A DNA stretch of 60,778 bases, counting the filler, from Trichosphaerium sp. ATCC 40318 (taxonomy: Eukaryota; Protista; Tubulinea): the NCBI GenBank assembly GCA_038496445.1. It is 3 parts of 3 records of this genome, joined end to end, with 100 filler letters (N's around TTAATTAATTAA, not from the genome) between each part and the next. Parts side by side here need not be neighbours in the genome. Positions count along the whole stretch, not along the records: positions 15,571 to 44,704 come from JALMLS010000222.1; 2 more parts are not named here. The stretch is one strand, 5' to 3'. Both the position numbers and the translations under genes were made by a program. Below are positions 15,830 through 43,417 of the stretch, piece after piece. Within the stretch, counting starts at the first letter, position 1. Each line of letters opens with the position of its first letter. Below the pieces are notes generated by a model. It searched no databases and was not told the origin of the DNA. It was given only the letters and a program-made list of their open reading frames with translations.

Positions 15830-17525
15830 TTATCAGTTACACCTTCCGATACACTACCCTGTTACGAGTTACAGCAATCGCTGACATAGGTTTTATAGTC
15901 CTTTTTTTTATCTTTTCTACTTTTTAATTATCTTTTAAAGCAGGAGATTTACTCAACCGCTTTTAGCTTACGTTAAAAAGATAATTTAAATTTAAATTAT
16001 CTTTTTATTTCTGCCCTATTTAGTTTATTTTTCATAAAAAGTTGCTTTTCCTAAGAAAACTCTACTTTAAAATACAAACTTTTTTGATTTTTTTTTTGAT
16101 TAATTTAAACTACGTCCAGCCACCCAGCTTTCGCTGGGCCACGGCGGTATGTACGAGCGCAGGCAAGTATTCACGCGGTGTGATGATCCGCGATTACTAG
16201 CAATTCATCTTCATATTCCTATTTCAGGGAATATCCGAACAAGAGATTGTTTTATCAGACTAGCGCTAATCACTTATGAATAGCATCTTGTTGTACCAAC
16301 GTTGTATCACATTTGAAGCCAAACCATTAAGGCCATGACGACCAGTCGTCATCACTACTAACTATCATATTGCATGATTTGCTAAATTGTATTATTATTT
16401 TCACTCAATTTCATGGGTACGCCCGTTTATCCAGTAAGGCGACATATCACTACACGAGCTGACGGCGCCATGCAACACCTGGACCTAAAGTATTCTCTCA
16501 ATTTTTAATATAAATTTGAAAAAAACCTACTACTTATAAATATAACTTTATCTTGGGGCATATATCTAGGTTTGTAAGATTAAACGCGGATCATCAGATA
16601 ATCAACATGATCCACTGCTGGTAATACACTCCGCCAATTTCTTAGGTTTACATCTTGCGACATATTTCCCCAGGTGAGATATTTACGCGTAAGCTTCACC
16701 ACCGGTACAAGTCACAAAGGATTTAAAACCTCCTAGATGTCCAGCGCCAAATATCCATCGGTCACAGCGTAGATTACAAGGGTATCTAATCTTTTCACTC
16801 CCTACGCTTTCGATTACTAACGTCTATTCTTTCACAGTACGCGATTGCTCCGCATGATGGTCTTATAAATCTTAGAATTCTACTCCTAATTTATAATACC
16901 ACGTACTCAAAAAAATACAAAGACATAAGTTAAATGAGTTATCCTCAGATCAACCCGAGTTTTTTACTCAAAACTTTATGGACAGTTTACTTCCCTTTAC
17001 ACCAATCAAGATGAGTAGCACTTGGGCCCCCGTGTTACCGCGACTGCTGCACGAAGTTAGACAGCCTTTCCAATAATTACTATCACTATTATCATTATTT
17101 CACTGACTTTCGACTCTGCCTTCTTAAGCGAACAATCTTTCTACAACTGTGCTAAATTTAGCCACACGGCATAACTGGATCGTGCATTAAACTTGTCCAA
17201 AATCCCTCACTGCTGCGCCTTAACGTTCGGGTCATCTCTCCCCGCTGTGCCAGTTTACCCTCTCAGTCCTGGTACGGTCTTCGGCTAGGTAAGCTTTACC
17301 TTAAACCTACTACTTATCATTTACGATACATTCCTATGTGTCAAAAACTCGTATCTCTTTATATAAAAATTATAAATCTATTTACTTTATTAAGCTTATT
17401 TTGCTTAACATAGCTAGCTAATATCGATTAATACTCACCTTACGGGCATTCTAAATAATATAGAATATTACCTTGCATGTGTTAAGTCCACATTAGCACT
17501 CACTCAGCGCAAAATCATACGCTAA
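15830..17525 (-). rRNA. rns: Mitochondrial small-subunit rRNA
   Basis: Reverse complements of conserved SSU motifs: TACCCTGTTACGAGTT (15856), ACGAGCTGACGGCGCCATGCAACACCT, GGGTATCTAAT, TTACCGCGACTGCTGCAC (17035), CTTGCATGTGTTAAG (17472). Confidence 0.96.
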
Positions 17526-17560
17526 CTTTTACTTGTTTTTACACCAACTACCTTTAATAA

Positions 17561-17631
17561 CGAGCAAATCGGACTTGAACCGATATCTGAAAGGCCGACA
17601 ACTTCTATTTTACCTTTTAAACTATTGGCCC
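17561..17631 (-). tRNA. trnD: tRNA-Asp(GUC), needs 2 G insertions
   Basis: Anticodon loop TTGTCGG. Anticodon stem GAAG[G]/CCTTT and acceptor GGGCCAA/TTG[G]CTC+G pair fully only after G doubling. Confidence 0.9.
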
Positions 17632-17634
17632 TTT

Positions 17635-17704
17635 TTTGGATAGCAGACTCGAACCTGCACTTTTGGCTCCAAAGCCAACACTCTACCTTTTAAGTTATAC
17701 CCTG
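17635..17704 (-). tRNA. trnP: tRNA-Pro(UGG), cryptic
   Basis: CAGGGTATAACTT...; stem TTGGC/GCCAA with a 6-nt loop TTTGGA (7 nt after G doubling, giving G37); T arm GCAGG-TTCGAGT-C[C]TGC. Confidence 0.75.
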
Positions 17705-17710
17705 TTTTTT

Positions 17711-17783
17711 TTTTGGAGGCCGGACTCGAACCGATCTCCTCAAGGGTCATGAGCCTGCGAGCTAACCTATACTCCACTCCCGA
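17711..17783 (-). tRNA. trnM: tRNA-Met(CAU), probable initiator
   Basis: Loop CTCATGA; CAGG[G]/CCCTT gives the three G:C pairs diagnostic of initiator tRNA after one G insertion. Confidence 0.8.
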
Positions 17784-17785
17784 TT

Positions 17786-17865
17786 TTTCAGTGACGGGAC
17801 TTGAACCGCACGTTTTTTCAAACACAAATTTTGAATCTGACGTGTCTACATTCCACCACACTGAC
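17786..17865 (-). tRNA. trnL: tRNA-Leu(CAA)
   Basis: Long variable arm, loop TTCAAAA. D-loop AATG[G]TA and T stem GCG[G]G/CCCGT each lack a G. Confidence 0.88.
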
Positions 17866-17937
17866 TTTTTCAGGCCGGACTTGAACCGACATCAAAGATT
17901 TTGGAAACCTCTATTTTACCAATTAAACTACTGATAC
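17866..17937 (-). tRNA. trnW: tRNA-Trp(CCA)
   Basis: Stem GAGGT/ATCTT, loop TTCCAAA; T arm GTCGG-TTCAAGT-CCGGC. Confidence 0.88.
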
Positions 17938-17946
17938 CTTTTTAAC

Positions 17947-18018
17947 TTCGGGCGACAGGCATCGAACTGCAACCTTTGGGTTAAAAACCCACTGCTCTAC
18001 CTATTAAGCTACGCCCCC
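17947..18018 (-). tRNA. trnK: tRNA-Lys(UUU)
   Basis: GGGGGCGTAGCTTAATAGGTAGAGC; loop TTTTTAA; T stem GCAG[G]/CCTGT. Confidence 0.88.
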
Positions 18019-18021
18019 TCC

Positions 18022-18103
18022 CTAACGCGGTGGGATTCGAACCACGAAGAGAAAAACTCAATAAATTTACAATCTACTCCTTTAACCACTTGGATACACG
18101 TAC
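18022..18103 (-). tRNA. trnY: tRNA-Tyr(GUA)
   Basis: Loop TTGTAAA, long variable arm; T stem GTG[G]G/CCCAC. Confidence 0.88.
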
Positions 18104-18107
18104 TTTT

Positions 18108-18175
18108 GTTGGGTAGTTGATTCGAACCAACGTAACTTATTCAAAATCAAGCGCCTAACCTCTCGGCATACCCAT
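18108..18175 (-). tRNA. trnQ: tRNA-Gln(UUG), cryptic
   Basis: Loop TTTTGAA; anticodon stem CTTGA/T[C]AAG and T stem GTTGG/C[C]AAC each lack a C. Confidence 0.8.
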
Positions 18176-18245
18176 TTAGCCCAGTGGACTCGAACCCACA
18201 TCTTACAACTTATGAGTTGCTGTTTTTGCCTTTAAACTATAGTTC
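18176..18245 (-). tRNA. tRNA with CAU anticodon (elongator Met or lysidine-Ile), cryptic
   Basis: Stem GCAAC/GTTGT around a 6-nt loop TCATAA (7 nt after C doubling); T stem GTGGG/C[C]CAC. Confidence 0.75.
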
Positions 18246-18256
18246 TTTAAAAAAAA

Positions 18257-18326
18257 TATCCACGTTGGACTTGAACCAACATCGCCGAATTGAAAATACG
18301 TATCCTAACCTTTAGACGACGCAGAC
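18257..18326 (-). tRNA. trnE: tRNA-Glu(UUC)
   Basis: GTCTGCGTCGTCTAAAGGTTAGGA; loop TTTTCAA; acceptor pairs after C doubling (CCAAC[C]GTGGAT). Confidence 0.85.
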
Positions 18327-18328
18327 TT

Positions 18329-18400
18329 TGGCTCGTAACGGAATTGAACCGTTATTACACTATTTGCAATAGTATGGATTAACCGTTATCCTAACGAGCC
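18329..18400 (-). tRNA. trnC: tRNA-Cys(GCA), canonical as encoded
   Basis: Perfect cloverleaf: GGCTCGT/ACGAGCC, TACTA-TTGCAAA-TAGTG, AACGG-TTCAATT-CCGTT. Confidence 0.93.
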
Positions 18401-18402
18401 TT

Positions 18403-18482
18403 TTTCAGTGACGGGACTTGAACCGCACGTTTTTTCAAACACGAGATCTAAATCCGACGTGTCTACATTCCACCACACTGAC
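18403..18482 (-). tRNA. trnL: tRNA-Leu(UAG), near-identical paralog of trnL(CAA)
   Basis: Identical to 17786-17865 except for the anticodon arm (TCGGA-TTTAGAT-CTCGT). Confidence 0.85.
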
Positions 18483-18521
18483 TTTTTTTTCTTTTTTCCT
18501 TCTAACAAGGATTTTTTATAG

Positions 18522-18662
18522 TTGAGATTGCTTTTTTTAAATATAGATGCAGATCGTAGTTTTGTGCATCTATGGAAATATAAACAATCTTTGAGATTGT
18601 TTATATTTCCATAGATGCACAAAACTACGATCTGCATCTATATTTAAAAAAAGCAATCTCAA
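18522..18662. repeat. Perfect hairpin, about 69-bp arms, 3-nt loop
   Basis: TTGAGATTGCTTTTTTTAAATATAGATGC...AAACAATCT-TTG-AGATTGTTT...GCATCTATATTTAAAAAAAGCAATCTCAA. Confidence 0.95.
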
Positions 18663-20039
18663 AAAGACTCTATTTCCGTTATATAAGTATAATCTCTCAA
18701 TAAACTCCCACTTTCTTAGAGTTCTCTGAAAACTTAAATATGAATAAATCCTACCTTCATAAACTTAACAACCAATCACTAAATATTTCATACGACACGC
18801 AAACCTACGACGTAAATTTCAAAAAATAAGTAACCTTTCATTAATTTATCTTACTTTTATAATCTATAAAATAATACTATAATTATATAACCTTAAATTT
18901 AACAATACTTTACGCCCATTAAAGTTAATTTTTTTAAAAGACATGTGAGGCTTTAGTTTCTGTTACTAATTCTCTTCATCAATTTTCAAATTTCATCAAA
19001 TTTTATTCATCGATGAAATTCTAAATAAAAAAAGAAATAAAACCACATGCAAAGAAAATATTCAAGAAATACAAAATTAAATATACTTATTTTAAATAAT
19101 TTAAAACATTATATAAAAATCTATTGCATTTTGTATAAATTTATTTATATTTTTTTCAAAACGTTTTGAAAACTATACAAATTTTAATACCTTTTTCACG
19201 ACGTCACTAATACGCATCCTCTTATTTCAACGTTTTTTATTTCTTACTTTTTTTTTTGTTGTTAAATATACTTCTTTATTTTTTATTTTTATATTTTGCC
19301 AGCTTTTAGTGGTAATAATAGACGCTTGTTTTTTATTTCCTATTAGTATTATTATTTTTTTCTTTTTTTTTTTTCTTTTTTTTTTTGCTTTTGATTTTAA
19401 TTTTTTTATTTTTATTGTTATTTTTTGCAAGTTTATTTCTTTTTTTTCTTTTATCTGATCTTTTTCACAATTTATTAATTTTACTTTTATTTTTTTTACC
19501 CTTTTTTTTGTTTTACTTTTATAAAGCTGCGTATTAAACAAAAATAAATGTAAAAGCTCACGCGATTTCTGTTCGAAAAAAAAAGAGTAATATAATCTTA
19601 TTAAGTTATATTACTCTTTTTTTTTCGAACTCTTTTTAAATACCCATCTTATTTAATTTTTTGTTAATATTACTAAACTAGTACCATAACTTCTTTTATA
19701 CATTAATTTTGTCCATAAACTTATAACGCCATAATTTTTTAAAAATCACGCATTCATATTTATATTATTACGCGATTTTTTACCTCTATTTTTTTTTATA
19801 TTAAACCTACACCTTTTATTAATCTATTAATTTATTATAAAACATGTATGTATATATTGTTTTAATTTATCTAAACTTTATATTTATAATCACTTCTCGC
19901 TAAATTTAACCTTCACGGCTCTTTTTTAAAAAATTAAACCTACATTTGTTTGAAAAATATTTCCTATCTTTTATTTAAAATAAATTAGATAATATACTCT
20001 TTTTTCTCTTCTTTTTCAAAATCTATCCACTAAACGCAT

Positions 20040-21284: not shown

Positions 21285-21450
21285 AAAGATCCAGCGTTAG
21301 TTTTACTTGATCTTTGGCTTTAAATTTAAAGCCAAAGATCAAGTAAAACTAACGCTGGATCTTTTTACTATCTCCTCTTTATTACGTGAACGCAAGATGT
21401 TCGAAACACCAAAATACGGTGTTTCGAACATCTTGCGTTCACGTAATAAA
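21285..21450. repeat. Two adjacent unrelated hairpins (21285-21364 perfect 80-bp palindrome; 21378-21450 with 7-nt loop)
   Basis: AAAGATCCAGCGTTAG...TTTAAA|TTTAAA...CTAACGCTGGATCTTT and TTTATTACGTGAACGCAAGATGTTCGAAACACC...GGTGTTTCGAACATCTTGCGTTCACGTAATAAA. Confidence 0.95.
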
Positions 21451-25503: not shown

Positions 25504-26574
25504 TTAAGTAAAAAAATAAGAAAAAAATTCATATATATTTCCCAGCATGTTGGTTATAAAATAATAAAAATCAACGCCTTTTTCATAAAATCATTCGCTT
25601 CATCTGTTTTCTATTTCTTTATCTAATATTGATAATTTTTTTTTTATTGCCTCTTTTATTATTGATCTAGACTTAACAATCCCTCATAATATATCTTGCA
25701 GTAATCCATATTTTTCTAAAAGCTTTGCCCATAAATCACGTCGGGCCTCTAATAGCGATGCATTATTCTCCACAAATCTATGCATTTGATCCTTAAAATA
25801 CTTGGACAGTTTTCCTACATCTGTAGCTTGCCAGTCAAAAACTTCTATCAAATCATATAAATTTTTTTTTATTGCTCTTAAATTTTCTAAATCTAAGGTT
25901 TTTATGTTTTCTTTAGTATTAAAATAAGCAAATAATTCTTCTAATTTCAATTTCAGACTATTTATACAGACGTCTATATAACACACTACATTTTTTTTAG
26001 ATAATGCTGAAACACTGTTTTCTAAATAAATTTTTAAATTTTCACTGTTATACAATTCTCACTCTTTTATTCAATCAAAAATTTTTTCTAATCCTTCTAT
26101 ATTTTCTCCTTCTATATTTTCTCCTTCTATTTTTTCTAATCCTTCTATATTTTCTCCTTCTATATTTTCTCCTTCTATTTTTTCTAATCCTTCTATATTT
26201 TCTCCTTCTATTTTTTCTCCTTCTATTTTTTCTAATCCTTCTATATTTTCTCCTTCTATTTTTTCTCCTTCTATTTTTTCTACTCCTTCTATTTTTTCTT
26301 CTTCTATTTTTTCTCCTTCTATTTTTTCTACTCCTTCTATTTTTTCTTCTTCTATTTTTTCTTCTCCTTCTATTTTTTCTCCTTCTATTTTTTCTTCTTC
26401 TTTCTTTTCTCCTTCTATATTTTTTTCTCCTTCTTCTGATGCTGATCTTCTATTTACTACCACCATCACGCCTACTATTACTCCTATAATACAAGTGGCT
26501 GCAAAACCAAAACCTATGTCTACATACCCAATACCTCCCACAGCTAACGCCATAGGATCCATTCCTCATAACAT
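25504..26574 (-). CDS. Unassigned 356-aa mitochondrial ORF, uninterrupted in code 4: N-terminal TM segment plus acidic (IEGEK/IEGLEK) repeat
   Basis: With TGA=Trp, the track ORFs 26071-26562 and 25684-26055 join in frame from ATG 26574 (MLWGMDPMALAVGG...) to TAA 25504-25506. No frameshift is needed. Confidence 0.8.
26080..26440 (-). repeat. Coding minisatellite of 15/18-bp units (ATAGAAGGAGAAAAA, ATAGAAGGATTAGAAAAA)
   Basis: About 20 degenerate tandem units encoding IEGEK/IEGEN/IEGLEK/IEGVEK. Confidence 0.92.
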
Positions 26575-26679
26575 AATAACATTTTTTTTTTGCTTTTTTA
26601 TAACATTGTTATAAAAAAGCAAAAAAAAAATCGTTAATATTCATATAAAAAATATTATAAAAATTAAAATTAAAAATAA

Positions 26680-26961
26680 ATTATAACTAATAATTAATGT
26701 AAAAAAAAAAACCCTAAACCTACAAAATCAAATATTTATAAATATCACACTTTCCACAATATTTCTCTTTTATTTATATTTTGAACCCAACATTATAAAT
26801 ACCAAAAGAACCTATTCACTCTAATATACTTTTTCCATTAAATTAAAACTATATTTATAAGAAAACAAATAAAAAACTATACCTATACTTGCTCCTCCTA
26901 CACCGACAGTACATACTCCTGCTGCTAATACTTTTGCTGCTAATACTATTTGTCATTCCAT
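26680..26961 (-). other. Chimeric atp9(5')::nad5(3') reading frame
   Basis: 26961 to about 26878 encodes MEWQIVLAAKVLAAGVCTVGVGGASIGI, near-identical to atp9 at 36082. It continues directly into VFYLFSYKYSFNLMEK[G]ILEWIGSFGI, which resembles the Nad5 C-terminal motif Y..SF..LDKG.IE.LGP.GI. Confidence 0.7.
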
Positions 26962-26989: not shown

Positions 26990-29063
26990 ACTATTACTAT
27001 ACTGTTTCTACCTGTTGCCGCAAATATTTTGACGATTTAACATATTCATTGTTATCTTAAAGTAATTACAAATAAAAAAACTTACGATAACAATCAGTTT
27101 AAAAACACTTTATTATACTTCTTTTCATAATTACTTTTTTATAAAACTATTTTTCCCCAACAAAAAAAACATTACCTAGGAAAAATACAATAATAATTTA
27201 CTGTTGGTATATTGCTCAAAATACTATACTTTTTATGAAAATATACATATTAATAATATGTATATTTTCATAAAAAGTATAGTATTTTGAGCAATATACC
27301 AACAGTAAATTATTGAAAAATAAAATAGAAATTACATTTTTTTCAACTCAAAAGACGCATTACCTTGTAACTTTTTGTAAAACATTTTCTATATTAGAAT
27401 ATCAACATCTTTTTCCGTATAGACCAATCTGGCACCGCTACATCTACTCACGCCCTAAATTTTTACGTAAATTATAATTTAGATGAATAAATTTACTTAA
27501 TCTATATTTAATAAATTTATTCTGTTTATTCTCCTTGCCCAAAAAACAAATTCAAATTATGCTTTGAATTTGTTTTTTTTTTACACCTTTTTTTGCAAGC
27601 CTAATAACCCTAAAAAACTAAAATTAACCTTGAAATATCTTGACTTATAAAATTCCTAAATTATTCTTACTTTCTCATTTTATATTTAAATTTAAACTTT
27701 TGTTGTATAATACCACACTTCTTTTAAATTAGTATACCTTCCCATCTACTAAACATATTTTGATTTTTTTCAGCGAACCTTTCTTTACAATTAGCCCTAC
27801 ACCAAAGCTAAATATAATAATTCTTTATAGTACAGCCTATATTATTACACCTAAGTATATAGACTTTACACCTAACCAACAGTAAAATATTTCATTAGTT
27901 TTTCAAATCAAACTTTCTTAATCAGTAACCTAATAAAGGCAATTCTAAACGAATATCAGAAAACATATAAAAAAGCAATCAAACAAAGCAATTTCGAAAT
28001 CAATTCACAAATAAAATACCATATTTGTTATAATTTACACAATACAATCTGTTATTACACTCCTATATTATTCATAAAATTTCTAATGCTATTTACACTT
28101 TAATATCAAAACTACTCTTATACTAAAATGTAAAATTTAACGATTTGTATAGTCATAACCATCATGAGATTAAATAAGATCAACTTACGCTTATATGAGT
28201 TGATCTTATTTTTCTCTATTTTCTTGTCAAAAAACCTAAATCTACATCCCCATAACCGTTTAAAATAAAAACTGTAAACGCAAATCTTGCTTTATTAGTT
28301 AATCATTCTATATTAAAAATTCATTTAACTTGCTTTAGTTCGAACTATATATATAAAAATTACATCATTGTTAAATTTCCTCTAACACATCATTAACATC
28401 TAAAGTATCCTGAACAACTGCTCCCATTTTCTAGACGCAAACTCAAAAGGCTTCAAGGTAAATGCTCTACAGGACATACTGCTATAAAATTTGTTGTTAA
28501 TTCTCCGTAATTATTTTTTCTCTATACGTACTAATTCTAAAAACATGCCACGACCTAAAAAACTAAACCAAAACTACCAAATACTTCTAAGCTAAACAAA
28601 ACACACTAGCACACTGAATACACTTGTCATATATGTGCTTGTTAATTCTCAACAAAAAAACCTAATACTGACCTTTTTTTTTTTTCATGTATCTTCCTCT
28701 ATCATCCCAAAAATAAAAGAAATATCTTGTAAATCACAACACCCGCCTGATCACAAATTGGACAATCCAACGGATGATTACATAGTAAATATTCCATTAC
28801 ATTTTCTCTAGCAATCTCTATCTTAAAGATATTTTCTTATAACTAAACCTGATACTAGAGGTACACTACATGCTATTTCTAATTAGACGTTCTAGTTGTC
28901 TCTATTAAACATAATCTGCAGTTCCCAATATTCCTAATTTTTCAAAATAACATAATCTTGGTAAATTTAAATTAATACATCTAAACCTTGGATTGCTGTT
29001 CGCCACTCGGTACCAAAATTACTCGATTAATCGCTTTATACCTACCATTTCTGATTCTCACAT
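26990..29063 (-). CDS. nad11: NADH dehydrogenase subunit 11, full length (cryptogene)
   Basis: [77 protein letters not shown]; C-terminal DVAVPG.VYTEKD..YSNIE and NYFKDN...KSSK. Confidence 0.92.
27192..27314. repeat. Perfect 123-bp hairpin inside the nad11 coding region
   Basis: AATAATTTACTGTTGGTATATTGCTC...CATATTA-A-TAATATG...GAGCAATATACCAACAGTAAATTATT. Confidence 0.93.
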
Positions 29064-29126
29064 TTTGGGGTGTTTTTTTTTACTTTTTTTTATATTTTAA
29101 TTAAACAGGGGGAAAAGAAGGGAGAT

Positions 29127-29226
29127 AACTTTGATTTTTTTTAAAAAGATTAATTGAATATCTTTTAGAAATAACCAAATTTTTCTAAAAGATATTCAAT
29201 TAATCTTTTTAAAAAAAATCAAAGTT
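29127..29226. terminator. Hairpin overlapping the stop codon of the 468-aa ORF (mirror copy about 43255-43354); possible processing or terminator structure
   Basis: AACTTTGATTTTTTTTAAAAAGATTAATTGAATATCTTTTAGAAA...TTTCTAAAAGATATTCAATTAATCTTTTTAAAAAAAATCAAAGTT. The function is inference. Confidence 0.45.
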
Positions 29227-30571
29227 TTTTAAAAAGTCAAGTAAAAAATACATAATGTCAATTAACAAATTTATCAAAATTTACAGGAGACAAACTTATT
29301 CATAAAATAGGAAGTATAAAAAAAGTCTCCCCAAAGCTTGCAAAAGTTACTAATTTGTCAAGAACAATTAAATCTAAAAAAGAATATAAAGTTTCTATAA
29401 AAACGAACTCTCTTTCTTTTTCAAGCATGCTTATAATTTTATCTTTTCAAATTTCATTTATACTATCTATTATAGTATATCAATCCATTCATCAAACAAG
29501 TTCATCCTTTTTAATATCTCTTCATAAATTTTCGTAATAGTTACGTAAATTCTCTTCATAATTTTTAGAAAAATTTAAAACAGCATCATGAATGTTTTCA
29601 CTGTAACTACTCTCTAAATCTGCTAATTCTTCACCTTTCTTTTTTTTTTTTATAAATTCTTTTCATTTAGGATAATCTTGCACAATACTTAAATCAACGT
29701 TATGTTTAACACAAGTATTTGTTAAATAATTAAAAAAAATATCTAGCTGATTTTCAAAATATTTAGTAGTTTGTTCAATTAAATTTTCTTTATCTATTTC
29801 CATTGCTTTTTTTTTTTCTAACATTATTTTTTTTAATTCTACTATTAAATTTACATTTTTTTCACTTATATCATAATTTTCAATTATAAATTCTACTCAG
29901 CTTAAATTCTCAAACATAACTGACAAATTACTTTCTTCTATTATTATTCCTTCGTTTTCTAAAGTATAAGTTACAAAATTAAAAAAATCAGCATCTTGAC
30001 TTTGCTCAATTTCACCTATATGATCTACTATTTTTTTTTTTATAAACTCTTTATCATTTTGCATAAATAGAATAAAATTATTTATTTCTTCTAAATTAAG
30101 CATAGAATTAATAAAAAAATGATAATAAATAGAACACATAACTAATCATAAGATCATAGAAGCAAACGCACTATAGCTTCAAGTTAAACTATATCCTTGG
30201 CTAGCTAGTTGCGTATATAGATCTGCTACCACTGTTGGATCTATAGGTACTAAATTGTCTAACTTATCCACTATTTCTTCTCTGCTTTTTTCTTCATTAA
30301 AGAACGTTAAGGTTAAGCCTCCCCCCTCGAAGCTTAACCATTCAAAAAAATGAACCCTCCCTTTCGCTAATAAAGCATAATTATTTATCAAATCTTCTTT
30401 AAAAAAAGGATTATTATAAAATACTAATTCTTTACTAAATAAAAAATAAAATTTAAAAACACTTATAAAACACCCCGCCATGTAATGTATTGAATTCAAT
30501 ACAAACCAAAGAACCAAAAATGATAGGAGCTCACTTTTTACATATTTCTTTAATATTACAAAATTAAACAT
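29165..30571 (-). CDS. Unassigned 468-aa mitochondrial ORF, uninterrupted in code 4 (copy 1)
   Basis: With TGA=Trp, track ORFs 30179-30610 and 29897-30139 join and continue to TAA 29165-29167: 1407 nt from ATG 30571 with no frameshift. Confidence 0.8.
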
Positions 30572-30748
30572 GATAATTTTTCTTCTTTTTTTATATTTTA
30601 AACTTAACAATACCTATATAAATTACTCTATTACACTACACAAAATACACTGCATATATACTTTAAATATATTTATTTTTCTTCTTTTTCTTTTTCTTTT
30701 TTTTTCTTAAACGTCTTTTAGTTATTCTTTTATTTTTTATTTTACCAT

Positions 30749-31135
30749 TTATAATTTCATCTGAAATTTTGGTTCCAAATTCTTTTGTCTTCACAATTTA
30801 AAAGATTTTGATGTTTTACCATAGTCTTACTTCGTTGACATTTACAGGTAAACCACTTAGTAACTTTAACCTCTATTACTATAAGATCTGTATATCTTCT
30901 TATATATTTTTTAATTCTCACATAACCTTTCACCTAAATAATAATTAGAAAAAAGATAATACTTTAAAATCATCCCTTTCCTAAAATTCCAATTGCTCAA
31001 ATTTTCGCAAGGCGATATACCTAAGTTAAAACATATTCTACTACCCTTCGTCTACAAAGCCCCCTAACGCAGATAAATTTACTGAAATTGCTCCTTACTT
31101 TTTAATATTACACCAACTAAAATAAAATTTTTCAT
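30749..31135 (-). CDS. rps13: Ribosomal protein S13 (cryptogene, copy 1)
   Basis: MKNFILVGVILKSK..ISVNLSALGGF...ICFNLGISP...NRG.KLLSGLPVNGQRSKTNGKTSK after single insertions. Confidence 0.85.
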
Positions 31136-31879
31136 AACTTAATCATAATAAAGTAATCCTTTTTTCCTTCTCTTCACGTACTTTTCCTATTTTTAGTTCA
31201 TTAAAATTTGTGGATGCACAATCCTATTTTCCTATATATATGAACTTTTTATAAAGCAAAAAATATGCGCAAAATTATTTAGTATATAAGATATATACTA
31301 AAACATATTATAATTTTCTATAATAAACTTTTATATAAATTAAATCATACTAAAAAGATATAAAAAATGACCTAAAAATAAATTTATCTACGTAATTTCT
31401 TATATGTTTAAAAACACGCACTCTAAAACTAAACCTTTTAAATAAAATTTAAAATAAAAACTTTATAAGATCATAAAAACGAAAGAAAAAGACGCTAATA
31501 AAATTTAAAAAAACTAAATAATCAAAGAAGAGTAGCGTAGAGATTTTCTATCTATTTTCACTATACAAATTTTTTTAACTTCAACTATCTATGACTACAA
31601 AACCATTTAAAAAAACCTCTTATACTTTCTAGATAAATATAACATTAAATTAATATTAGCACCAAATAATGAGTAGATACACCATCAATCCTTTTCTTAC
31701 ATAATTCAAAGGTATACTTGCACACTCAAAATTCCTGTATTTGGATTTAACACGAAAAAATAAAAACAGTTAAAGACTAATACACCATTTAAACTTCTAA
31801 CTTTATCCTCACCAAAATTATAATTATCTTTAAAAATAAGATCTCTCTTTTGTTAAAAAGTAATCTTCAACTAAATCTC

Positions 31880-33337
31880 ATAGGCATCTTCATAAGAGTA
31901 TACAATATAAAATATAAAAACTCTCCTATAGACATAAAATATAACATAAAATAAATAAAAATAAACACAGATAGTAAATAACGCCCAACAGAACATCAAA
32001 AATTTAAAGCAACATAAGCATCTGGATAATCACTATCCTTCTGGGCATACCCGCCATCCTAACAAATGCATTGGCAAAAAAGTCATATTTACTCCTATAA
32101 AATTTCCCAAAATTGTAATCTTCCTATAAAATCGGATATTTTTTTCCAAACATTAAAGAACTTCAATGATAAAACCCGCAAAAATTCCAAACACAGAACT
32201 AAAGATAAAACATAATGAAAATGAGCAACACATAATATGTATCATGCAATGCTATATCTAAAACACGTTTGCTAAAATAATACCAGTTACACTCCAAAAC
32301 TAAACATTAGTACAAATCTGCAGCATAAAATAGCGGAACTCTTCATTCTACTATACAAACATTATTGTTGATAACAACCAAAAACTTTAACCCTGAAGGC
32401 ATTGCTATTATCATAGTTACTGTCATAAAATATACCTCGTATCATCATCTAAACCCGCTGTAAACATATGATGACTCATACAATAGATCCTAAAACTGCT
32501 ATACATACCATGCATAAACCATAGAATCATGACATAAACCTCTTTATAAGTTCAACAGAAATTACTACACTAGTTATACAAAAGCTGGTAATATTAATAT
32601 ATAAACTTCTGATGTCCAAAAAATCAAAAAATATGTGATATAAAACAGGATCTCCACCTCCTGTGGATCAAAAAATGTTGTATTAAAATACGATCTGTTA
32701 TTAACATAACTAAAGCTCCTCTAAAACAGGTAATGTCAATAATAATAATACCGCTGTTATATAAATGATACTGCAAACAACCAATTCTATAAGTATCCAT
32801 AATCGCATATTCATTATAGTTACCATAAAATTTATTGCACCGATATTGATGAAATTCCGGCTATATGCAACTCAAAATACAAGCATCTATGACATTCCAG
32901 GACTAGCCTTAATACAGAAAGTAATGGATATAAAGTTCATCCTGCTCTGCACCATCTCCTATAACAAAGATCACATTAATAATAATAAAGAAGGCGCAAT
33001 AATCAGAAACCTAAATTATTTACTCTTGGGAATGCATCTCCGGGGCCCCTAAACTTAATGAACTATAAAATTACCTAAACCCCTATTAATAAAGGCATAA
33101 CGAAAAAAAAAATCATTAATAGACATGCGCTGTTACGATTACATTATAAACTTGTTATCTTGAACCAAAATTAACGGACAGGCATTCCTAATTCTATACG
33201 TATTATCATGATAATATAGTTCCCATACTCCTCCAAAAAAACTTGCTCATATATATAGCATCCTATATCTTTATGATTTGTTGAACATGACCACTCTTAA
33301 TGTAACATAAATATTGATAAAAACTTAATAAATACAT
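31880..33337 (-). CDS. cox1: Cytochrome c oxidase subunit 1 (cryptogene, copy 1; 3' end approximate)
   Basis: KRWSCSTNHKDIG, YNVIVTAHG, GAPEMAFPRVNN, GAGAGWTLYP, FFDPTGGGDPVLY.HIFWFFGHPEVYILILP, HDTYYVVAHFHYVLSLG and GMPRR after repeated single-base insertions. Confidence 0.96.
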
Positions 33338-33489
33338 TATTTTTAATTTATAATATACTTTTTATTTATTAAAAATCTTTTTTTTCTCTACTTTTATTAA
33401 AAACTTAATTAATGGAATCTAGTCAAAAAACTACCTTATATATATTTTTTTTACAGTTGTAAAAAAAATATATATAACATTATTTTACA

Positions 33490-35950
33490 ATATTTTTTTT
33501 ACTACCATATTTAATCCTGATATTGAATCATAAATATAAATTAAAATTAGCAGATTCTACTTATATGTTATCAGCAGTTCCTTTTTCGCACGTAGCTTTA
33601 ACGCCAACCGGAACGTAAAACCGATAACGCTACCACAAGCGGTGCACCCTATTACCATAACGCCTCTCTCGTACTGCATTGGGCTCTAATTTTAATTTTT
33701 ATCACAGCAGATAGGGGCAAACTGTCTCACGACGTTCTAAACCAGCTCACGTACCTCTTTAAACGACGAACAGTCGTACCCTTGGGAGCCTACTCCCCCA
33801 GGATGAGATGAGCCGACATCGAGGTGCCAAACCGCTCGCAGATAAGAACTCTCAAAGGCAATAAGCTGTTATCCCTGGCGTACTTTTATCCGTTTGCGGA
33901 TGCCCTACCTGTAAGCGCATCCGGAAAACTATGACGACTTTAAATCCCTGTTAACCCTTTCAAGCTTACAGTCAGCTAAAATAAAAACCATATGCACTAC
34001 GGAACTTTAACGTCCTGAATTAGCCTTTGTACACTCCGTTACCTTTTAGGGAGCTTCGCCCCAGACAAACTATCCACCATGCATTTTTAATTTCTACTAA
34101 GATTAGATTTTTCCAACAAAAAATCAATATCCACTGACGGCTCCTTAAATGACCTAAACCATTAAATCATACCTCTTGATTATACTGTGTTTTTGCTTTC
34201 CTTAACCCATACAAGGTTTTAGTAAAGTGCACAGGGTCTTCCGTCCCGCTGCAATTTTTTCGCATCTTCACGAAAACTTCAATTCACTAAAATAACACTT
34301 GAGACAGTAGAAGAGTCGTTACGCTTCATGCAGGACTACAATTAATAGCTAGGAATTTCGCTACCTTAAGACGTCAAGGATTACGGCCGCGTTTACTGCT
34401 GCTTATATTCATTGCTTTTAAACAAATCCTTTTCACGATACAGCACGGGCAGGCATCGAACCTATACTTCATATACTATTTAGCAGGGTCCTGTGTTTTA
34501 GTAAACAGTCGCTCTTCTCTGTTCCGCTTCCCCCAAAATACTTCTTAAAAATAAATTATTTTCACTTTTAATTTATTTTAAAAAACAATATTTTAGGTAC
34601 CTATCTCCCGAAGTTACTGAGTTATTTTGCGAGTTCCTTAAGCATTATTCTTCTATTACTTATTGTTCTACAACTAATTACCTGTGTCGGTTATTGGTAC
34701 GTTTTTTTTTTTTATTTTTTTCTTGTAAGTTACAAAAAAATTGATATTTTACGATTACAATAACTATTTTTTGTAATTAAATTTCTATAAAATTGCTCTG
34801 AATATAACTAATATAACCTTAGTCGGAATCTTACAAACACATTCCCTTAAGGACCGCTAACCCTTATCTGTTTAACATAGATAAGGAAACCTTAATCTTT
34901 CGTAATAATGTTTTTACATATAAAGCTACTCATGCAACATTTATACTATTGATATTTTAACCAAACTCACGTACAGTTTTTTACATACAATACATCTGCT
35001 ACCAAATTAATTCTATAGCTTCGCAAATAATTTAGAGCCCCTTACATCATGACGCTTAAAAAACAATACGTGAGCTTTTACGCATCTTTAAAGAATGGCT
35101 GCTTCTAGCCCATCTCCGCTTTTATTACGTCTTTCCAGTTGATTATTATTTAAGGGCTTAGCTTATAGTCTGGGCTTTTTCCCTCTCGACTAGAATCTTC
35201 GCACCTAAGTCTTTCTATACTTTTTTATTTTTATAACATCTTGGTTTCACTATACCCGTAAATAACTTAGTTACTCCGGAATAATATTAGTGCCATACTC
35301 TACAAAATCAAAATACGCTTGCTTAAACAAGTTTCGCAGAAAACCAGCTATCACCAAGTTTGATTAGCTTTCACTCCTAACCAACACTCATCGAGCCTCT
35401 TGCAACAGACACCGGTTCAGCCAAAAACTTGGTGTTGTTAGATCACTTGGTTTCGGTCATATTTTTTAGACTTTACAGATTTACTCTTTGCTTTCACTAC
35501 GCCTCCCTTAAAGTTAAGCTTGCTCAAAAATATACTCATTGGCCCATTATACAAAAGTACGCTGTCATATCTTTTTTATACTCCAACCGTTAAAGTATTA
35601 AGTTCATTTCTTTTCAACTATCCCTACGATATCTTTTTCAACTTCCTTCACAGTACTTTTACACTATCGGTTATAAAAAAATTCTTACTTTAGCAGCAGG
35701 CACTGCCTATTCGATTTTCTCTACTTAAAAGAACTCAACGCATTTGTCACCATACTAACGTTTCTACACGATGTTTTTTTTATAGGTACTGAGATGTTTC
35801 ACTTCCCTATTTTTATTTTTCTATTTTAAAAATTTAAAAAGATACCTAAAAATCATAGCATTGTACTACTCAATTAAGTTTTCGCTTTATTAAAGCGTCT
35901 TTTTTTTGATACCTAGTAATCCCTTAATACTTAATATATAATAAAAGTAA
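33490..35950 (-). rRNA. rnl: Mitochondrial large-subunit rRNA (copy 1, ends approximate)
   Basis: Reverse complements of GGAAGTGAAACATCTCAGTACC, GGTAGCGAAATTCCT, GGGATAACAG and GCACCTCGATGTCGGCTC. Confidence 0.95.
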
Positions 35951-36529: not shown

Positions 36530-38990
36530 TATTATATATTAAGTATTAAGGGGATTACTAGGTATCAAGAAAAAAGACGCTTTAATAAAGCGAAAACTTT
36601 AATTGAGTAGTACAATGCTATGATTTTTAGGTATCTTTTTAAATTTTTAAAATAGAAAAATAAAAATAGGGAAGTGAAACATCTCAGTACCTATAAAAAA
36701 AACATCGTGTAGAAACGTTAGTAGTGGTGACAAATGCGTTGAGTTCTTTTAAGTAGAAAATCGAATAGGCAGTGCTGCTGCTAAAGTAAGAATTTTTTGA
36801 TAACCGATAGTGTAAAAGTACTGTGAAGGAAGTTGAAAAAGATATCGTAGGGATAGTTGAAAAGAAATGAACTTATACTTTAACGGTTGGAGTATAAAAA
36901 AGATATGACAGCGTACTTTTGTATAATGGGCCAATGAGTATATTTTTGAGCAAGCTTAACTTTAAGGGAGGCGTAGTGAAAGCAAAGAGTAAATCTGTAA
37001 AGTCTAAAAAATATGACCGAAACCAAGTGATCTAACAACACCAAGTTTTTGGCTGAACCGGTGTCTGTTGCAAGAGGCTCGATGAGTGTTGGTTAGGAGT
37101 GAAAGCTAATCAAACTTGGTGATAGCTGGTTTTCTGCGAAACTTGTTTAAGCAAGCGTATTTTGATTTTGTAGAGTATGGCACTAATATTATTCCGGAGT
37201 AACTAAGTTATTTACGGGTATAGTGAAACCAAGATGTTATAAAAATAAAAAAGTATAGAAAGACTTAGGTGCGAAGATTCTAGTCGAGAGGGAAAAAGCC
37301 CAGACTATAAGCTAAGCCCTTAAATAATAATCAACTGGAAAGACGTAATAAAAGCGGAGATGGGCTAGAAGCAGCCATTCTTTAAAGATGCGTAAAAGCT
37401 CACGTATTGTTTTTTAAGCGTCATGATGTAAGGGGCTCTAAATTATTTGCGAAGCTATAGAATTAATTTGGTAGCAGATGTATTGTATGTAAAAAACTGT
37501 ACGTGAGTTTGGTTAAAATATCAATAGTATAAATGTTGCATGAGTAGCTTTATATGTAAAAACATTATTACGAAAGATTAAGGTTTCCTTATCTATGTTA
37601 AACAGATAAGGGTTAGCGGTCCTTAAGGGAATGTGTTTGTAAGATTCCGACTAAGGTTATATTAGTTATATTCAGAGCAATTTTATAGAAATTTAATTAC
37701 AAAAAATAGTTATTGTAATCGTAAAATATCAATTTTTTTGTAACTTACAAGAAAAAAATAAAAAAAAAAAAAAACGTACCAATAACCGACACAGGTAATT
37801 AGTTGTAGAACAATAAGTAATAGAAGAATAATGCTTAAGGAACTCGCAAAATAACTCAGTAACTTCGGGAGATAGGTACCTAAAATATTGTTTTTTAAAA
37901 TAAATTAAAAGTGAAAATAATTTATTTTTAAGAAGTATTTTGGGGGAAGCGGAACAGAGAAGAGCGACTGTTTACTAAAACACAGGACCCTGCTAAATAG
38001 TATATGAAGTATAGGTTCGATGCCTGCCCGTGCTGTATCGTGAAAAGGATTTGTTTAAAAGCAATGAATATAAGCAGCAGTAAACGCGGCCGTAATCCTT
38101 GACGTCTTAAGGTAGCGAAATTCCTAGCTATTAATTGTAGTCCTGCATGAAGCGTAACGACTCTTCTACTGTCTCAAGTGTTATTTTAGTGAATTGAAGT
38201 TTTCGTGAAGATGCGAAAAAATTGCAGCGGGACGGAAGACCCTGTGCACTTTACTAAAACCTTGTATGGGTTAAGGAAAGCAAAAACACAGTATAATCAA
38301 GAGGTATGATTTAATGGTTTAGGTCATTTAAGGAGCCGTCAGTGGATATTGATTTTTTGTTGGAAAAATCTAATCTTAGTAGAAATTAAAAATGCATGGT
38401 GGATAGTTTGTCTGGGGCGAAGCTCCCTAAAAGGTAACGGAGTGTACAAAGGCTAATTCAGGACGTTAAAGTTCCGTAGTGCATATGGTTTTTATTTTAG
38501 CTGACTGTAAGCTTGAAAGGGTTAACAGGGATTTAAAGTCGTCATAGTTTTCCGGATGCGCTTACAGGTAGGGCATCCGCAAACGGATAAAAGTACGCCA
38601 GGGATAACAGCTTATTGCCTTTGAGAGTTCTTATCTGCGAGCGGTTTGGCACCTCGATGTCGGCTCATCTCATCCTGGGGGAGTAGGCTCCCAAGGGTAC
38701 GACTGTTCGTCGTTTAAAGAGGTACGTGAGCTGGTTTAGAACGTCGTGAGACAGTTTGCCCCTATCTGCTGTGATAAAAATTAAAATTAGAGCCCAATGC
38801 AGTACGAGAGAGGCGTTATGGTAATAGGGTGCACCGCTTGTGGTAGCGTTATCGGTTTTACGTTCCGGTTGGCGTTAAAGCTACGTGCGAAAAAGGAACT
38901 GCTGATAACATATAAGTAGAATCTGCTAATTTTAATTTATATTTATGATTCAATATCAGGATTAAATATGGTAGTAAAAAAAATATTGTA
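36530..38990 (+). rRNA. rnl: Mitochondrial large-subunit rRNA (copy 2, ends approximate)
   Basis: GGGAAGTGAAACATCTCAGTACC (36669), GATAGCTGGTT, AAGGTAGCGAAATTCCT, CAGGGATAACAG, TTTGGCACCTCGATGTCGGCTC, GAACGTCGTGAGACAGTT. Confidence 0.95.
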
Positions 38991-39138
38991 AAATAATGTT
39001 ATATATATTTTTTTTACAACTGTAAAAAAAATATATATAAGGTAGTTTTTTGACTAGATTCCATTAATTAAGTTTTTAATAAAAGTAGAGAAAAAAAAGA
39101 TTTTTAATAAATAAAAAGTATATTATAAATTAAAAATA

Positions 39139-40600
39139 ATGTATTTATTAAGTTTTTATCAATATTTATGTTACATTAAGAGTGGTCATGTTCAACAAAT
39201 CATAAAGATATAGGATGATGTATATATATGAGCAAGTTTTTTTGGAGGAGTATGGGAACTATATTATCATGATAATACGTATAGAATTAGGAATGCCTGT
39301 CCGTTAATTTTGGTTCAAGATAACAAGTTTATAATGTAATCGTAACAGCGCATGTCTATTAATGATTTTTTTTTTTCGTTATGCCTTTATTAATAGGGGT
39401 TTAGGTAATTTTATAGTTCATTAAGTTTAGGGGCCCCGGAGATGCATTCCCAAGAGTAAATAATTTAGGTTTCTGATTATTGCGCCTTCTTTATTATTAT
39501 TAATGTGATCTTTGTTATAGGAGATGGTGCAGAGCAGGATGAACTTTATATCCATTACTTTCTGTATTAAGGCTAGTCCTGGAATGTCATAGATGCTTGT
39601 ATTTTGAGTTGCATATAGCCGGAATTTCATCAATATCGGTGCAATAAATTTTATGGTAACTATAATGAATATGCGATTATGGATACTTATAGAATTGGTT
39701 GTTTGCAGTATCATTTATATAACAGCGGTATTATTATTATTGACATTACCTGTTTTAGAGGAGCTTTAGTTATGTTAATAACAGATCGTATTTTAATACA
39801 ACATTTTTTGATCCACAGGAGGTGGAGATCCTGTTTTATATCACATATTTTTTGATTTTTTGGACATCAGAAGTTTATATATTAATATTACCAGCTTTTG
39901 TATAACTAGTGTAGTAATTTCTGTTGAACTTATAAAGAGGTTTATGTCATGATTCTATGGTTTATGCATGGTATGTATAGCAGTTTTAGGATCTATTGTA
40001 TGAGTCATCATATGTTTACAGCGGGTTTAGATGATGATACGAGGTATATTTTATGACAGTAACTATGATAATAGCAATGCCTTCAGGGTTAAAGTTTTTG
40101 GTTGTTATCAACAATAATGTTTGTATAGTAGAATGAAGAGTTCCGCTATTTTATGCTGCAGATTTGTACTAATGTTTAGTTTTGGAGTGTAACTGGTATT
40201 ATTTTAGCAAACGTGTTTTAGATATAGCATTGCATGATACATATTATGTGTTGCTCATTTTCATTATGTTTTATCTTTAGTTCTGTGTTTGGAATTTTTG
40301 CGGGTTTTATCATTGAAGTTCTTTAATGTTTGGAAAAAAATATCCGATTTTATAGGAAGATTACAATTTTGGGAAATTTTATAGGAGTAAATATGACTTT
40401 TTTGCCAATGCATTTGTTAGGATGGCGGGTATGCCCAGAAGGATAGTGATTATCCAGATGCTTATGTTGCTTTAAATTTTTGATGTTCTGTTGGGCGTTA
40501 TTTACTATCTGTGTTTATTTTTATTTATTTTATGTTATATTTTATGTCTATAGGAGAGTTTTTATATTTTATATTGTATACTCTTATGAAGATGCCTATG
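39139..40600 (+). CDS. cox1: Cytochrome c oxidase subunit 1 (cryptogene, copy 2; 3' end approximate)
   Basis: ATG 39139 MYLLSFYQYLCYIK-AG[G]-TGG gives the conserved RW.STNHKDIG; same motifs as copy 1. Confidence 0.96.
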
Positions 40601-43316: not shown

Positions 43317-43417
43317 AAGATATTCAATTAATCTTTTTAAAAAAAATCAAAGTTATCTCCCTTCTTTTCCCCCTGTTTAATTAAAATATAAAAAAAAGTA
43401 AAAAAAAACACCCCAAA

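What the first reader, a model, noticed from the sequence alone, without database searches (positions are those of the whole stretch)
17635..18482. tRNA acceptor stems appear to need 3'-end rebuilding rather than the usual amoebozoan 5' editing
Seen (5' strand/3' strand): Pro CAGGGTA/TATCCAA, Met TCGGGAG/CTCCAAA, Leu x2 GTCAGTG/CACTGAA, Trp GTATCAG/CTGAAAA, Lys GGGGGCG/CGCCCGA, Tyr GTACGTG/CGCGTTA. Mismatches are confined to pairs 1-3, and position 72 is A in all of them, usually merging into the A-rich spacer. The 5' side keeps canonical bases (G1 in Leu/Lys/Tyr, C1 in Pro). Established: Acanthamoeba-type editing replaces 5' bases via Thg1-like enzymes; templated 3' repair is known from the jakobid Seculamonas and the centipede Lithobius. 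Inference: 5' editing would give U1:A72 in all of these, so 3' truncation plus templated resynthesis is more parsimonious. That would be a second editing system in the same organelle.
Basis: partly seen in the sequence, partly recalled or inferred. Interest (0 to 1): 0.8.

Follow-up and report, generated by a model that had tools for sequence, protein, structure and literature searches.

The report
Mitochondrial tRNAs with unpaired acceptor ends
Twelve mitochondrial tRNA genes sit in a genome whose RNAs are corrected by single-base insertions, and nine of them (seven at the very first pair) still end in acceptor-stem bases that cannot pair, so a second end-repair step is probably needed, but the sequence cannot show which strand is rebuilt.

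Summary
Contigs from the likely source run and a 562-nt metagenome contig that is not shown to be independent carry the same DNA.

RNA contigs carry single extra bases, each identical to a neighbouring base and mostly G. I modelled 18 such insertions in the cluster. With them ARAGORN finds 12 tRNAs instead of 4, and the modelled numbers match two RNA contigs exactly (11 and 5).

Insertions repair the tRNA bodies and the Asp and Glu acceptor stems, and put the CAU tRNA's in register. They cannot repair Trp, Pro, both Leu, Met, Gln, Lys or Tyr. After editing, 14 of 36 top-three pairs are mismatched against 1 of 48 lower pairs. The 3' base is A in 10 of 14 non-redundant cases.

A separate terminal repair is therefore likely (about 0.8). 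Its direction is not shown. The A-rich, spacer-like 3' side and the G/C-rich 5' side lean towards 3' rebuilding (about 0.4). 5' editing by Thg1-like enzymes is about 0.3, and tolerated mismatches about 0.15. The "amoebozoan" label is unsupported.

The parts
18403..18482 (-). tRNA-Leu(UAG). G1xA72. One modelled G insertion in the T stem (near 18424).
   Evidence: X5 RNA contig rec22 covers 18300-18424 without a gap, so the 3' acceptor strand and its spacer are unedited in RNA.
18329..18400 (-). tRNA-Cys(GCA). Fully paired, no insertion needed.
   Evidence: 61 bits in Rfam, found by ARAGORN, no gaps in X5 rec22.
18257..18326 (-). tRNA-Glu(UUC). The acceptor stem becomes fully paired (three G-U pairs) after a modelled C insertion at the T-stem/acceptor junction (near 18263). 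A second modelled C lies near 18300.
   Evidence: X5 rec22 is clipped exactly at 18300.
18177..18246 (-). tRNA-Met/Ile(CAU), elongator type. Modelled insertions in the anticodon loop (C), T arm (C) and 3' acceptor strand (G or C). Residual A3xG70 and A4xG69.
   Evidence: ARAGORN finds it only with the acceptor insertion, which also brings the modelled count to the 11 observed.
18108..18175 (-). tRNA-Gln(UUG). Three modelled insertions. Residual A1xA72.
18022..18103 (-). tRNA-Tyr(GUA), long variable arm. Two modelled insertions. Residual G1xA72 and U2xU71.
17947..18018 (-). tRNA-Lys(UUU). One modelled G insertion in the T stem. Residual G1xA72 and G2xG71.
17866..17937 (-). tRNA-Trp(CCA). Needs no insertion. 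G1xA72 and A3xA70. Its discriminator A abuts G1 of Leu(CAA). This is the cleanest test case.
   Evidence: 48.9 bits in Rfam, found by ARAGORN in DNA, model uses no insertion.
17786..17865 (-). tRNA-Leu(CAA). Paralogue of Leu(UAG) with identical acceptor, D and T arms. G1xA72.
17711..17783 (-). tRNA-Met(CAU), initiator-like: GGG/CCC in the anticodon stem after a modelled G insertion. Residual C2xA71 and G3xA70.
17635..17704 (-). tRNA-Pro(UGG). Two modelled insertions (G37 and C61). Residual C1xA72 and A2xA71.
   Evidence: X5 rec20 has 5 gaps over 17514-17768, the number modelled.
17561..17631 (-). tRNA-Asp(GUC). Modelled G insertions in the anticodon stem and the 3' acceptor strand restore a perfect stem with G73.
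16107..17530 (-). Small-subunit rRNA (context). It is where the insertional editing is seen directly.
   Evidence: Rfam. Twelve listed insertions in RNA contigs of X5, X7 and X22, each duplicating a neighbouring base.
18523..18661 (.). 139-nt perfect palindrome just upstream of the cluster. RNA contigs stop here.
   Evidence: Loose ends carrying adapter sequence at 18571 and 18668.

Best explanation
This is a cluster of 12 mitochondrial tRNA genes, transcribed together upstream of the small-subunit rRNA. The organelle corrects its RNAs by inserting single bases that duplicate a neighbouring base (BB2-type editing). About 18 such insertions rebuild the D, anticodon and T arms, and repair or re-register three acceptor stems (Asp, Glu and the CAU tRNA). 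Nine tRNAs then still have bases that cannot pair, almost all in acceptor pairs 1-3 and usually with A on the 3' side. My preferred reading is that a separate step after transcription repairs them. The unpaired, spacer-like 3' bases (positions 70-72 and probably 73) would be trimmed back and resynthesised using the 5' strand as template, before CCA is added. Shown: the mismatches, their position, their persistence in precursor RNA, and the insertional editing. Inferred: that any repair happens (about 0.8) and that it acts on the 3' strand (about 0.4 overall).
For: 1. Mismatches cluster at the stem end: 14 of 36 pairs at positions 1-3 against 1 of 48 at positions 4-7, p = 1.3e-5.
2. RNA contigs with no substitutions but many single-base insertions prove editing. 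All 12 listed small-subunit rRNA insertions duplicate a neighbouring base.
3. The 18-insertion model raises ARAGORN detection from 4 to 12 tRNAs. It also reproduces the gap counts of X5 contigs rec21 (11) and rec20 (5). That leaves no spare insertion for the acceptor stems of Trp, Lys, Tyr or Pro, or for the 3' strand of Met.
4. A duplicated neighbour cannot supply the needed bases, for example in Trp (CUGAAAA) or Pro (UAUCCAA).
5. For the 3' direction: the 3' bases at mismatches are A in 10 of 14 cases, G in 3 and U in 1 (p = 0.009 against genome composition). A outnumbers U ten to one although the genome has them in equal amounts. The A's are continuous with A-run spacers.
6. The 5' bases are G/C in 8 of 14 cases. 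G1 is kept in Leu, Lys, Tyr and Trp, and C1 in Pro.
7. 5' editing would give U1 in seven tRNAs, while the fully encoded tRNAs start with G (Cys, Asp, Glu) or A.
8. The 4:69 mismatch in the CAU tRNA lies beyond the three-base reach of known 5' editing.
9. 3' editing has a precedent in Discoba, the jakobid Seculamonas (PMC4284800, PMC3590771).
Against: No mature tRNA end was observed, because contigs show only precursors. The G/C richness of the 5' side is not significant (p = 0.08-0.22). The limit to the first three pairs is the hallmark of 5' editing. Other heteroloboseans with such mismatches (Acrasis 8 of 11 tRNAs, Naegleria 8 of 20) are assumed to use 5' editing (PMC4202320). There are no overlapping tRNA genes, which usually accompany 3' editing in animals. 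In Gln the 3' base (A72) is the canonical one and the 5' base (A1) is not. Asp, Glu and the CAU tRNA keep their encoded 3' strands in register through dedicated insertion sites, so encoded 3' ends are used at least there. A-tract expansion from the spacers could produce the A bias under 5' editing too. The positions of the tRNA insertions are modelled, not read.
Confidence: 0.4

Rival explanations
1. Classical 5' editing. The first one to three 5' bases are removed and a Thg1-like 3'-5' polymerase resynthesises them on the genomic 3' strand. This gives U opposite each A: U1:A72 in Leu, Gln, Tyr, Lys, Trp and Pro, UUU in Trp and Met.
For: Mismatches are limited to pairs 1-3 (14 against 1), as in every documented 5' system, and such enzymes can add any of the four bases (PMC4284800). 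Heteroloboseans with the same pattern are assumed to edit the 5' side (PMC4202320). Gln would regain U1:A72. The encoded 3' strands are clearly used in Asp, Glu and the CAU tRNA. Trp's encoded discriminator abuts Leu G1, so the 3' end is ready for CCA addition.
Against: It would create U1 in 7 of 12 tRNAs and very A/U-rich stem ends. The strand that would be discarded is G/C-rich (8 of 14), while the supposed template is almost pure A, like the spacers. From memory (Lonergan and Gray 1993), the discarded 5' bases in Acanthamoeba are A or U. The 4:69 mismatch of the CAU tRNA would remain.
Confidence: 0.3
2. No terminal repair. The tRNAs work with frayed ends (GxA, AxA or CxA at 1:72 and sometimes at 2:71 or 3:70), or some are pseudogenes replaced by imported tRNAs.
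For: Precursor contigs show no substitutions in the acceptor stems (other_letters 0). GxA at a helix end is only mildly destabilising. Nothing here shows any repaired molecule.
Against: Pro, Met, Trp, Lys and Tyr would each have two mismatches in the top three pairs, leaving 5-bp stems. The tRNA bodies are otherwise well kept, and dedicated insertion sites maintain them (ARAGORN 4 to 12), which argues against pseudogenes. Where comparable mismatches were tested in other organelles they are repaired (PMC4284800).
Confidence: 0.15
3. Insertional editing alone explains everything. A duplicated base in the 5' strand, with the 5' end set one base further in, would give UUCAGUG in Leu, UAACGUG in Tyr and UUGGGUA in Gln, all fully paired with the genomic 3' strands.
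For: These variants score within one point of the best model or tie it. The Leu(UAG) variant makes ARAGORN find that tRNA.
Against: It cannot work for Pro, Met or Lys, and only half works for Trp.
Confidence: 0.07
4. Artefact: assembly errors at homopolymers, or wrongly placed gene ends, create the apparent mismatches.
For: The two arms of the inverted repeat differ at A/T runs of 8 or more, so the lengths of long runs in this assembly are unreliable.
Against: The X1 contigs and the ENA contig L001 carry identical DNA, though neither is certainly independent of the assembly. The mismatches depend on the first one to three bases after the paired part, not on run length. Rfam and ARAGORN agree on the gene ends.
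Confidence: 0.02

Closest known systems
Mitochondrial 5' tRNA editing of Acanthamoeba, Dictyostelium, Physarum and chytrid fungi (Thg1-like 3'-5' polymerases)
   Same: Many mtDNA-encoded tRNAs have mismatches confined to acceptor pairs 1-3. In Acanthamoeba it is 12 of 15 tRNAs, here 9 of 12. Physarum also combines this with insertional editing.
   Different: Here the 3' partner is nearly always A, so the product would be U-rich 5' ends. The side that is edited has not been determined. One mismatch lies at 4:69. The organism does not look amoebozoan.
Template-dependent 3' tRNA editing in the centipede Lithobius forficatus
   Same: The encoded 3' acceptor bases do not pair. Repair here would need all four bases (C, U, G and A) and perfect pairing to the 5' strand.
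   Different: In Lithobius 21 of 22 tRNAs are affected, with up to five mismatches and many overlapping genes. Here no genes overlap and the depth is at most three, perhaps four. The enzyme is unknown in both.
[quoted passage not shown]
   Same: A protist (Discoba) precedent for replacing 3' bases at mismatched acceptor ends.
   Different: Only two tRNAs are affected there, at positions 71-73, with a C/A bias that points to a CCA-adding-like enzyme. Here U and G would also be needed, and position 70 is affected.
Insertional editing of mitochondrial RNAs in the heterolobosean amoeba BB2 (Yang et al. 2017)
   Same: Single-base insertions, each identical to a neighbouring base and mostly G, in rRNA, mRNA and tRNA. 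They restore the GUUC motif, anticodon loops and acceptor stems.
   Different: Editing here is about three times denser (about 1 per 37 nt in the small-subunit rRNA against 1 per 92). The rRNA length differs, so this is another organism. BB2 was not reported to have residual terminal mismatches.
Predicted tRNA end editing in Acrasis kona and Naegleria (Fu et al. 2014)
   Same: Mismatches in the first one to three acceptor pairs of many mt tRNAs, alongside a different mRNA editing system.
   Different: Those authors assumed 5' editing and did not test it, and the mRNA editing there is C-to-U.

Membership tests
5' tRNA editing (Thg1-like polymerase type) | Mismatches restricted to acceptor pairs 1-3 of mtDNA-encoded tRNAs | tested here: met
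   14 of 36 against 1 of 48, p = 1.3e-5. The one exception, at 4:69 in the CAU tRNA, depends on a modelled insertion.
5' tRNA editing (Thg1-like polymerase type) | Mature tRNAs carry new 5' bases complementary to the genomic 3' strand | not testable with these tools
   Only precursor contigs were available, and the single read-laying run was used.
5' tRNA editing (Thg1-like polymerase type) | A nuclear Thg1-like protein targeted to mitochondria | not testable with these tools
   No nuclear sequence of this organism is held, and the organism is not identified.
Template-dependent 3' tRNA editing (Lithobius type) | Mature tRNAs carry new 3' bases complementary to the genomic 5' strand, using all four bases | not testable with these tools
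   The bases needed would be C, U, G and A, for example Pro U71 G72 and Trp U70 C72. No mature ends were seen.
Template-dependent 3' tRNA editing (Lithobius type) | Overlapping or 3'-truncated tRNA genes | tested here: not met
   No overlaps. Spacers are 0-10 nt, and Trp and Leu(CAA) abut exactly.
Seculamonas-type 3' editing | Replacement limited to positions 71-73 with C and A only | tested here: not met
   Position 70 is mismatched in Trp, Met and the CAU tRNA. U or G would be needed in Pro, Met, Trp and Gln.
BB2-type insertional RNA editing | RNA has single extra bases relative to DNA, without substitutions | tested here: met
   X5, X7 and X22 contigs show 0-1 other letters and 15-24 gaps per 580-860 nt. 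Run X1 holds the DNA form as well.
BB2-type insertional RNA editing | The inserted base is identical to a neighbouring encoded base, and G predominates | tested here: met
   12 of 12 listed sites (chance about 5e-5). In RNA sense they are G 8, C 2, A 2 and U 1. Only 12 of 86 sites were shown.
BB2-type insertional RNA editing | tRNAs are edited, restoring the T loop, anticodon loop and acceptor stem | tested here: inconclusive
   The gap counts in tRNA contigs (11, 5 and 0) match an 18-insertion model that lifts ARAGORN from 4 to 12 tRNAs. The exact positions were not displayed.
BB2-type insertional RNA editing | The host is a heterolobosean related to BB2 | not testable with these tools
   Organism names are coded, and no named relative was retrieved.

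The most novel reading that the evidence does not exclude
An undescribed protist lineage runs two unrelated RNA repair systems on the same tRNAs. One is very dense stutter-type insertion during transcription, about three times the density in BB2. The other is a templated resynthesis of the last two to four 3' acceptor bases using all four nucleotides. Such a Lithobius-like activity has not been seen outside animals, and this setting could make its unknown enzyme findable.
Probability: 0.35. Interest if true: 0.75.

Novelty: new member of a known kind. Interest (0 to 1): 0.5.

Why it matters
Terminal tRNA editing is known in two mechanistically opposite forms, and they have never been found together (PMC4284800). 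The enzyme for templated 3' repair is still unknown. This cluster offers clean substrates. Trp needs no other editing and carries two end mismatches, so a single tRNA-sequencing experiment would decide the direction. It also shows that reading tRNA genes from unedited DNA misleads in such genomes: ARAGORN found 4 of 12 genes in the DNA, and three acceptor stems look broken only because of missing inserted bases. Separately, the piece documents a second, much denser case of the BB2-type duplication editing. That bears on how the system spreads.

Tried and rejected
1. Physarum-type C insertion was my first idea from the cox1 frameshifts. The RNA contigs showed insertions of all four bases, mostly G and always duplicating a neighbour, which is the BB2 type.

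2. A C insertion in the 3' acceptor strand of Leu (giving CACUGAC) is rejected. X5 contig rec22 covers 18300-18424 without a gap.

3. I tried to fetch the RNA contigs of the cluster. The listing of cluster members found only one window ORF in the collection, from a DNA-form ENA contig. The search for homologous proteins with that ORF found only itself.

4. Exact-pattern scans with stretches of tRNA-Cys and tRNA-Trp found nothing in JGI metagenome contigs or viral contigs, so no comparative data were obtained.

5. Identifying the organism failed. Run names are coded, the sample code is in no paper, and every frame contains stops, so no long protein query could be made.

7. Pfam gave nothing for the long ORFs that need no editing.

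8. Contig X22 rec15 (10 gaps, net +4) does not fit the model (5-6 insertions expected). It may come from another strain with different A-run lengths. This is unexplained.

9. Contig X7 rec28 (1 gap over 18284-18559, 2 modelled) may be DNA-derived, as its depth is about 5.

Full report
**What is there**

The piece (15571-44704) is mitochondrial DNA with 72% A+T. Rfam finds a small-subunit rRNA at 16107-17530 on the minus strand. It also finds two inverted copies of the large-subunit rRNA, and tRNA hits only at 17560-18482 on the minus strand. Read on that strand, the cluster holds 12 tRNA genes in this order: Leu(UAG), Cys, Glu, Met/Ile(CAU), Gln, Tyr, Lys, Trp, Leu(CAA), an initiator-like Met(CAU), Pro and Asp. 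They are separated by 0-10 nt, mostly runs of A.

**The observation**

In those seven tRNAs the non-pairing positions lie in pairs 1-3 and position 72 is A.

The DNA itself is sound. Contigs of run X1 match the window with no gaps across 17784-18430. An ENA metagenome contig (L001, 562 nt) is 100% identical over 17607-18168. X1 is probably the run the window was assembled from, and L001 may come from the same sample, so this shows that the assembly is faithful rather than giving independent replication. The two arms of the large inverted repeat differ only at A/T runs of 8 or more. Long run lengths are therefore uncertain, but the bases at positions 70-72 are not.

Almost no long reading frames exist under any genetic code. 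cox1 (33300-31700, minus strand) changes frame about every 27 nt, for example at HPEVY, which needs one extra C.

Laying contigs of public runs on 16000-19500 showed RNA-derived contigs in three runs (X5, X7, X22). They have essentially no substitutions but 15-24 single-base insertions per 580-860 nt of the small-subunit rRNA. All 12 insertions that the tool listed duplicate the neighbouring base. In RNA sense they are G 8, C 2, A 2 and U 1. The chance of 12 out of 12 is about 5e-5.

This is the editing described for the heterolobosean amoeba BB2. That system has about 475 single-base insertions, 84% of them G. Each is identical to an adjacent base, and they affect rRNAs, mRNAs and 12 of 25 tRNAs, restoring the GUUC motif, anticodon loops and acceptor stems (PMC5421314). 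Editing here is about three times denser and the rRNA length differs, so this is not BB2 itself. The organism could not be identified.

**Editing inside the tRNAs**

The same run gave contigs over the cluster:
- X5 rec21 covers 17849-18327 with 11 insertions.
- X5 rec20 covers 17514-17768 with 5 insertions.
- X5 rec22 covers 18300-18424 with none.

I therefore modelled each gene as a standard cloverleaf that allows only duplications of a neighbouring base.

The best set has 18 insertions:
- Leu(UAG): 1
- Glu: 2
- CAU tRNA: 3
- Gln: 3
- Tyr: 2
- Lys: 1
- Leu(CAA): 1
- initiator-like Met: 1
- Pro: 2
- Asp: 2
- Trp and Cys: 0

With these insertions ARAGORN finds 12 tRNAs, 10 at its default threshold without the CAU acceptor insertion, against 4 in the DNA. 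The modelled numbers equal the observed ones in both long contigs, 11 and 5. Contig rec22 is clipped at both ends exactly at modelled sites, 18300 and 18424. Two low-depth or foreign contigs do not fit (X22 rec15 and X7 rec28).

**Consequences for the acceptor stems**

Insertions repair Asp (a G in UUG^CUC gives a perfect stem with G73) and Glu (a C at the T-stem/acceptor junction). They put the CAU tRNA in register. They cannot supply the bases needed in Trp, Pro, both Leu, Met, Gln, Lys or Tyr, and the matching counts leave no spare insertion for those stems.

After editing, the mismatches are as follows:

| Pair | Mismatched tRNAs (of 12) |
|---|---|
| 1:72 | 7 |
| 2:71 | 4 |
| 3:70 | 3 |
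| 4:69 | 1 |
| 5:68 to 7:66 | 0 |

That is 14 of 36 against 1 of 48 (p = 1.3e-5). Precursor contigs carry the genomic ends unchanged. Any repair must therefore be a separate event after transcription.

**Which strand is repaired?**

This is not shown by the data.

- The 3' bases at mismatches are A 10, G 3 and U 1, counting the two Leu paralogues once. Against genome composition p = 0.009. A outnumbers U ten to one although the genome has them in equal amounts.
- These A's merge with the A-run spacers, as expected for sequence that is discarded.
- The 5' bases are G/C in 8 of 14 cases, with G1 in Leu, Lys, Tyr and Trp, and C1 in Pro.
- 5' editing would produce U1 in seven tRNAs, while the fully encoded ones begin with G or A.
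- The 4:69 mismatch lies beyond the three-base reach of 5' editing.
- Seculamonas, also in Discoba, edits 3' ends (PMC4284800, PMC3590771).

*Arguments for the 5' strand:*
- The limit to three pairs is the hallmark of Thg1-like 5' editing, which can add any base (PMC4284800).
- Acrasis (8 of 11 tRNAs) and Naegleria (8 of 20) show the same pattern and are assumed to edit the 5' side (PMC4202320).
- No genes overlap here.
- The encoded 3' strands are evidently used in Asp, Glu and the CAU tRNA.
- Gln has the canonical A72.
- The G/C excess on the 5' side is not significant (p = 0.08-0.22).

*My estimates:*

| Explanation | Probability |
|---|---|
| 3' rebuilding | about 0.40 |
| 5' editing | about 0.30 |
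| Tolerated mismatches | about 0.15 |
| Insertion plus a shifted 5' end (Leu, Tyr and Gln only) | about 0.07 |
| Artefact | about 0.02 |

The remaining few per cent is left unassigned.

**Comparison and novelty**

End mismatches in protist mitochondrial tRNAs and both forms of repair are known. Two editing systems in one organelle are also known: Physarum, where both are documented, and Acrasis, where the second is predicted. What would be new is templated 3' repair using all four bases in a protist, next to BB2-type editing. That remains a hypothesis. The finding is a real and well-defined test case, not a demonstrated new mechanism. The amoebozoan attribution is not supported.

Noticed in passing
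window 15571-44704 (SSU 16107-17530; cox1 31700-33300, minus strand): The whole piece shows BB2-type duplication-insertion RNA editing at about three times the BB2 density. The small-subunit rRNA has about 1 insertion per 37 nt, and cox1 needs one extra base about every 27 nt. This looks like a second, more extreme case of a system known from one amoeba. The organism was not identified.
   Followed up: partly
window 27796-35598 and 36875-44683: A large inverted repeat carries the large-subunit rRNA, cox1 and a 482-codon ORF. The arms are 99.8% identical and differ almost only in the length of A/T runs of 8 or more. The contig ends inside the repeat.
   Followed up: partly
window 18523-18661: A 139-nt perfect palindrome lies just upstream of the tRNA cluster. 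RNA contigs of X5 stop on both sides of it with adapter sequence, so it may mark transcript ends or block reverse transcription. Rfam reports similar palindromes as spurious miRNA hits at 21285-21450, 27210-27296, 29133-29220 and 43261-43348.
   Followed up: no
window 17866-17937 and cox1 31700-33300: TGA is read as Trp in cox1 (in FWFFGH and AGWTLYP), yet the only tRNA-Trp found has anticodon CCA. Either C34 is modified or edited, or another tRNA is encoded elsewhere or imported.
   Followed up: no
window 29168-30613 (-) and 25507-26769 (-): Two long ORFs (482 and 421 codons with TGA read as Trp) need no insertional editing, in a genome where every recognisable gene does. The second has EEKIEG-type repeats. 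Neither has a Pfam match. The inverted-repeat twin of the first is broken at two lysine-codon runs.
   Followed up: partly
window 18403-18482 and 17786-17865: The Leu(UAG) and Leu(CAA) genes are identical outside the anticodon arm. This points to a recent duplication or gene conversion with an anticodon switch. Leu(UAG) keeps an AxC mismatch at 31:39.
   Followed up: no
window 16000-19500, run X1: The best-matching run holds both DNA-form and edited RNA-form contigs of the small-subunit rRNA, at very high depth. It seems to be a mixed DNA and RNA library of the source organism. Marine, wastewater and other metagenomes hold parts of the stretch.
   Followed up: no
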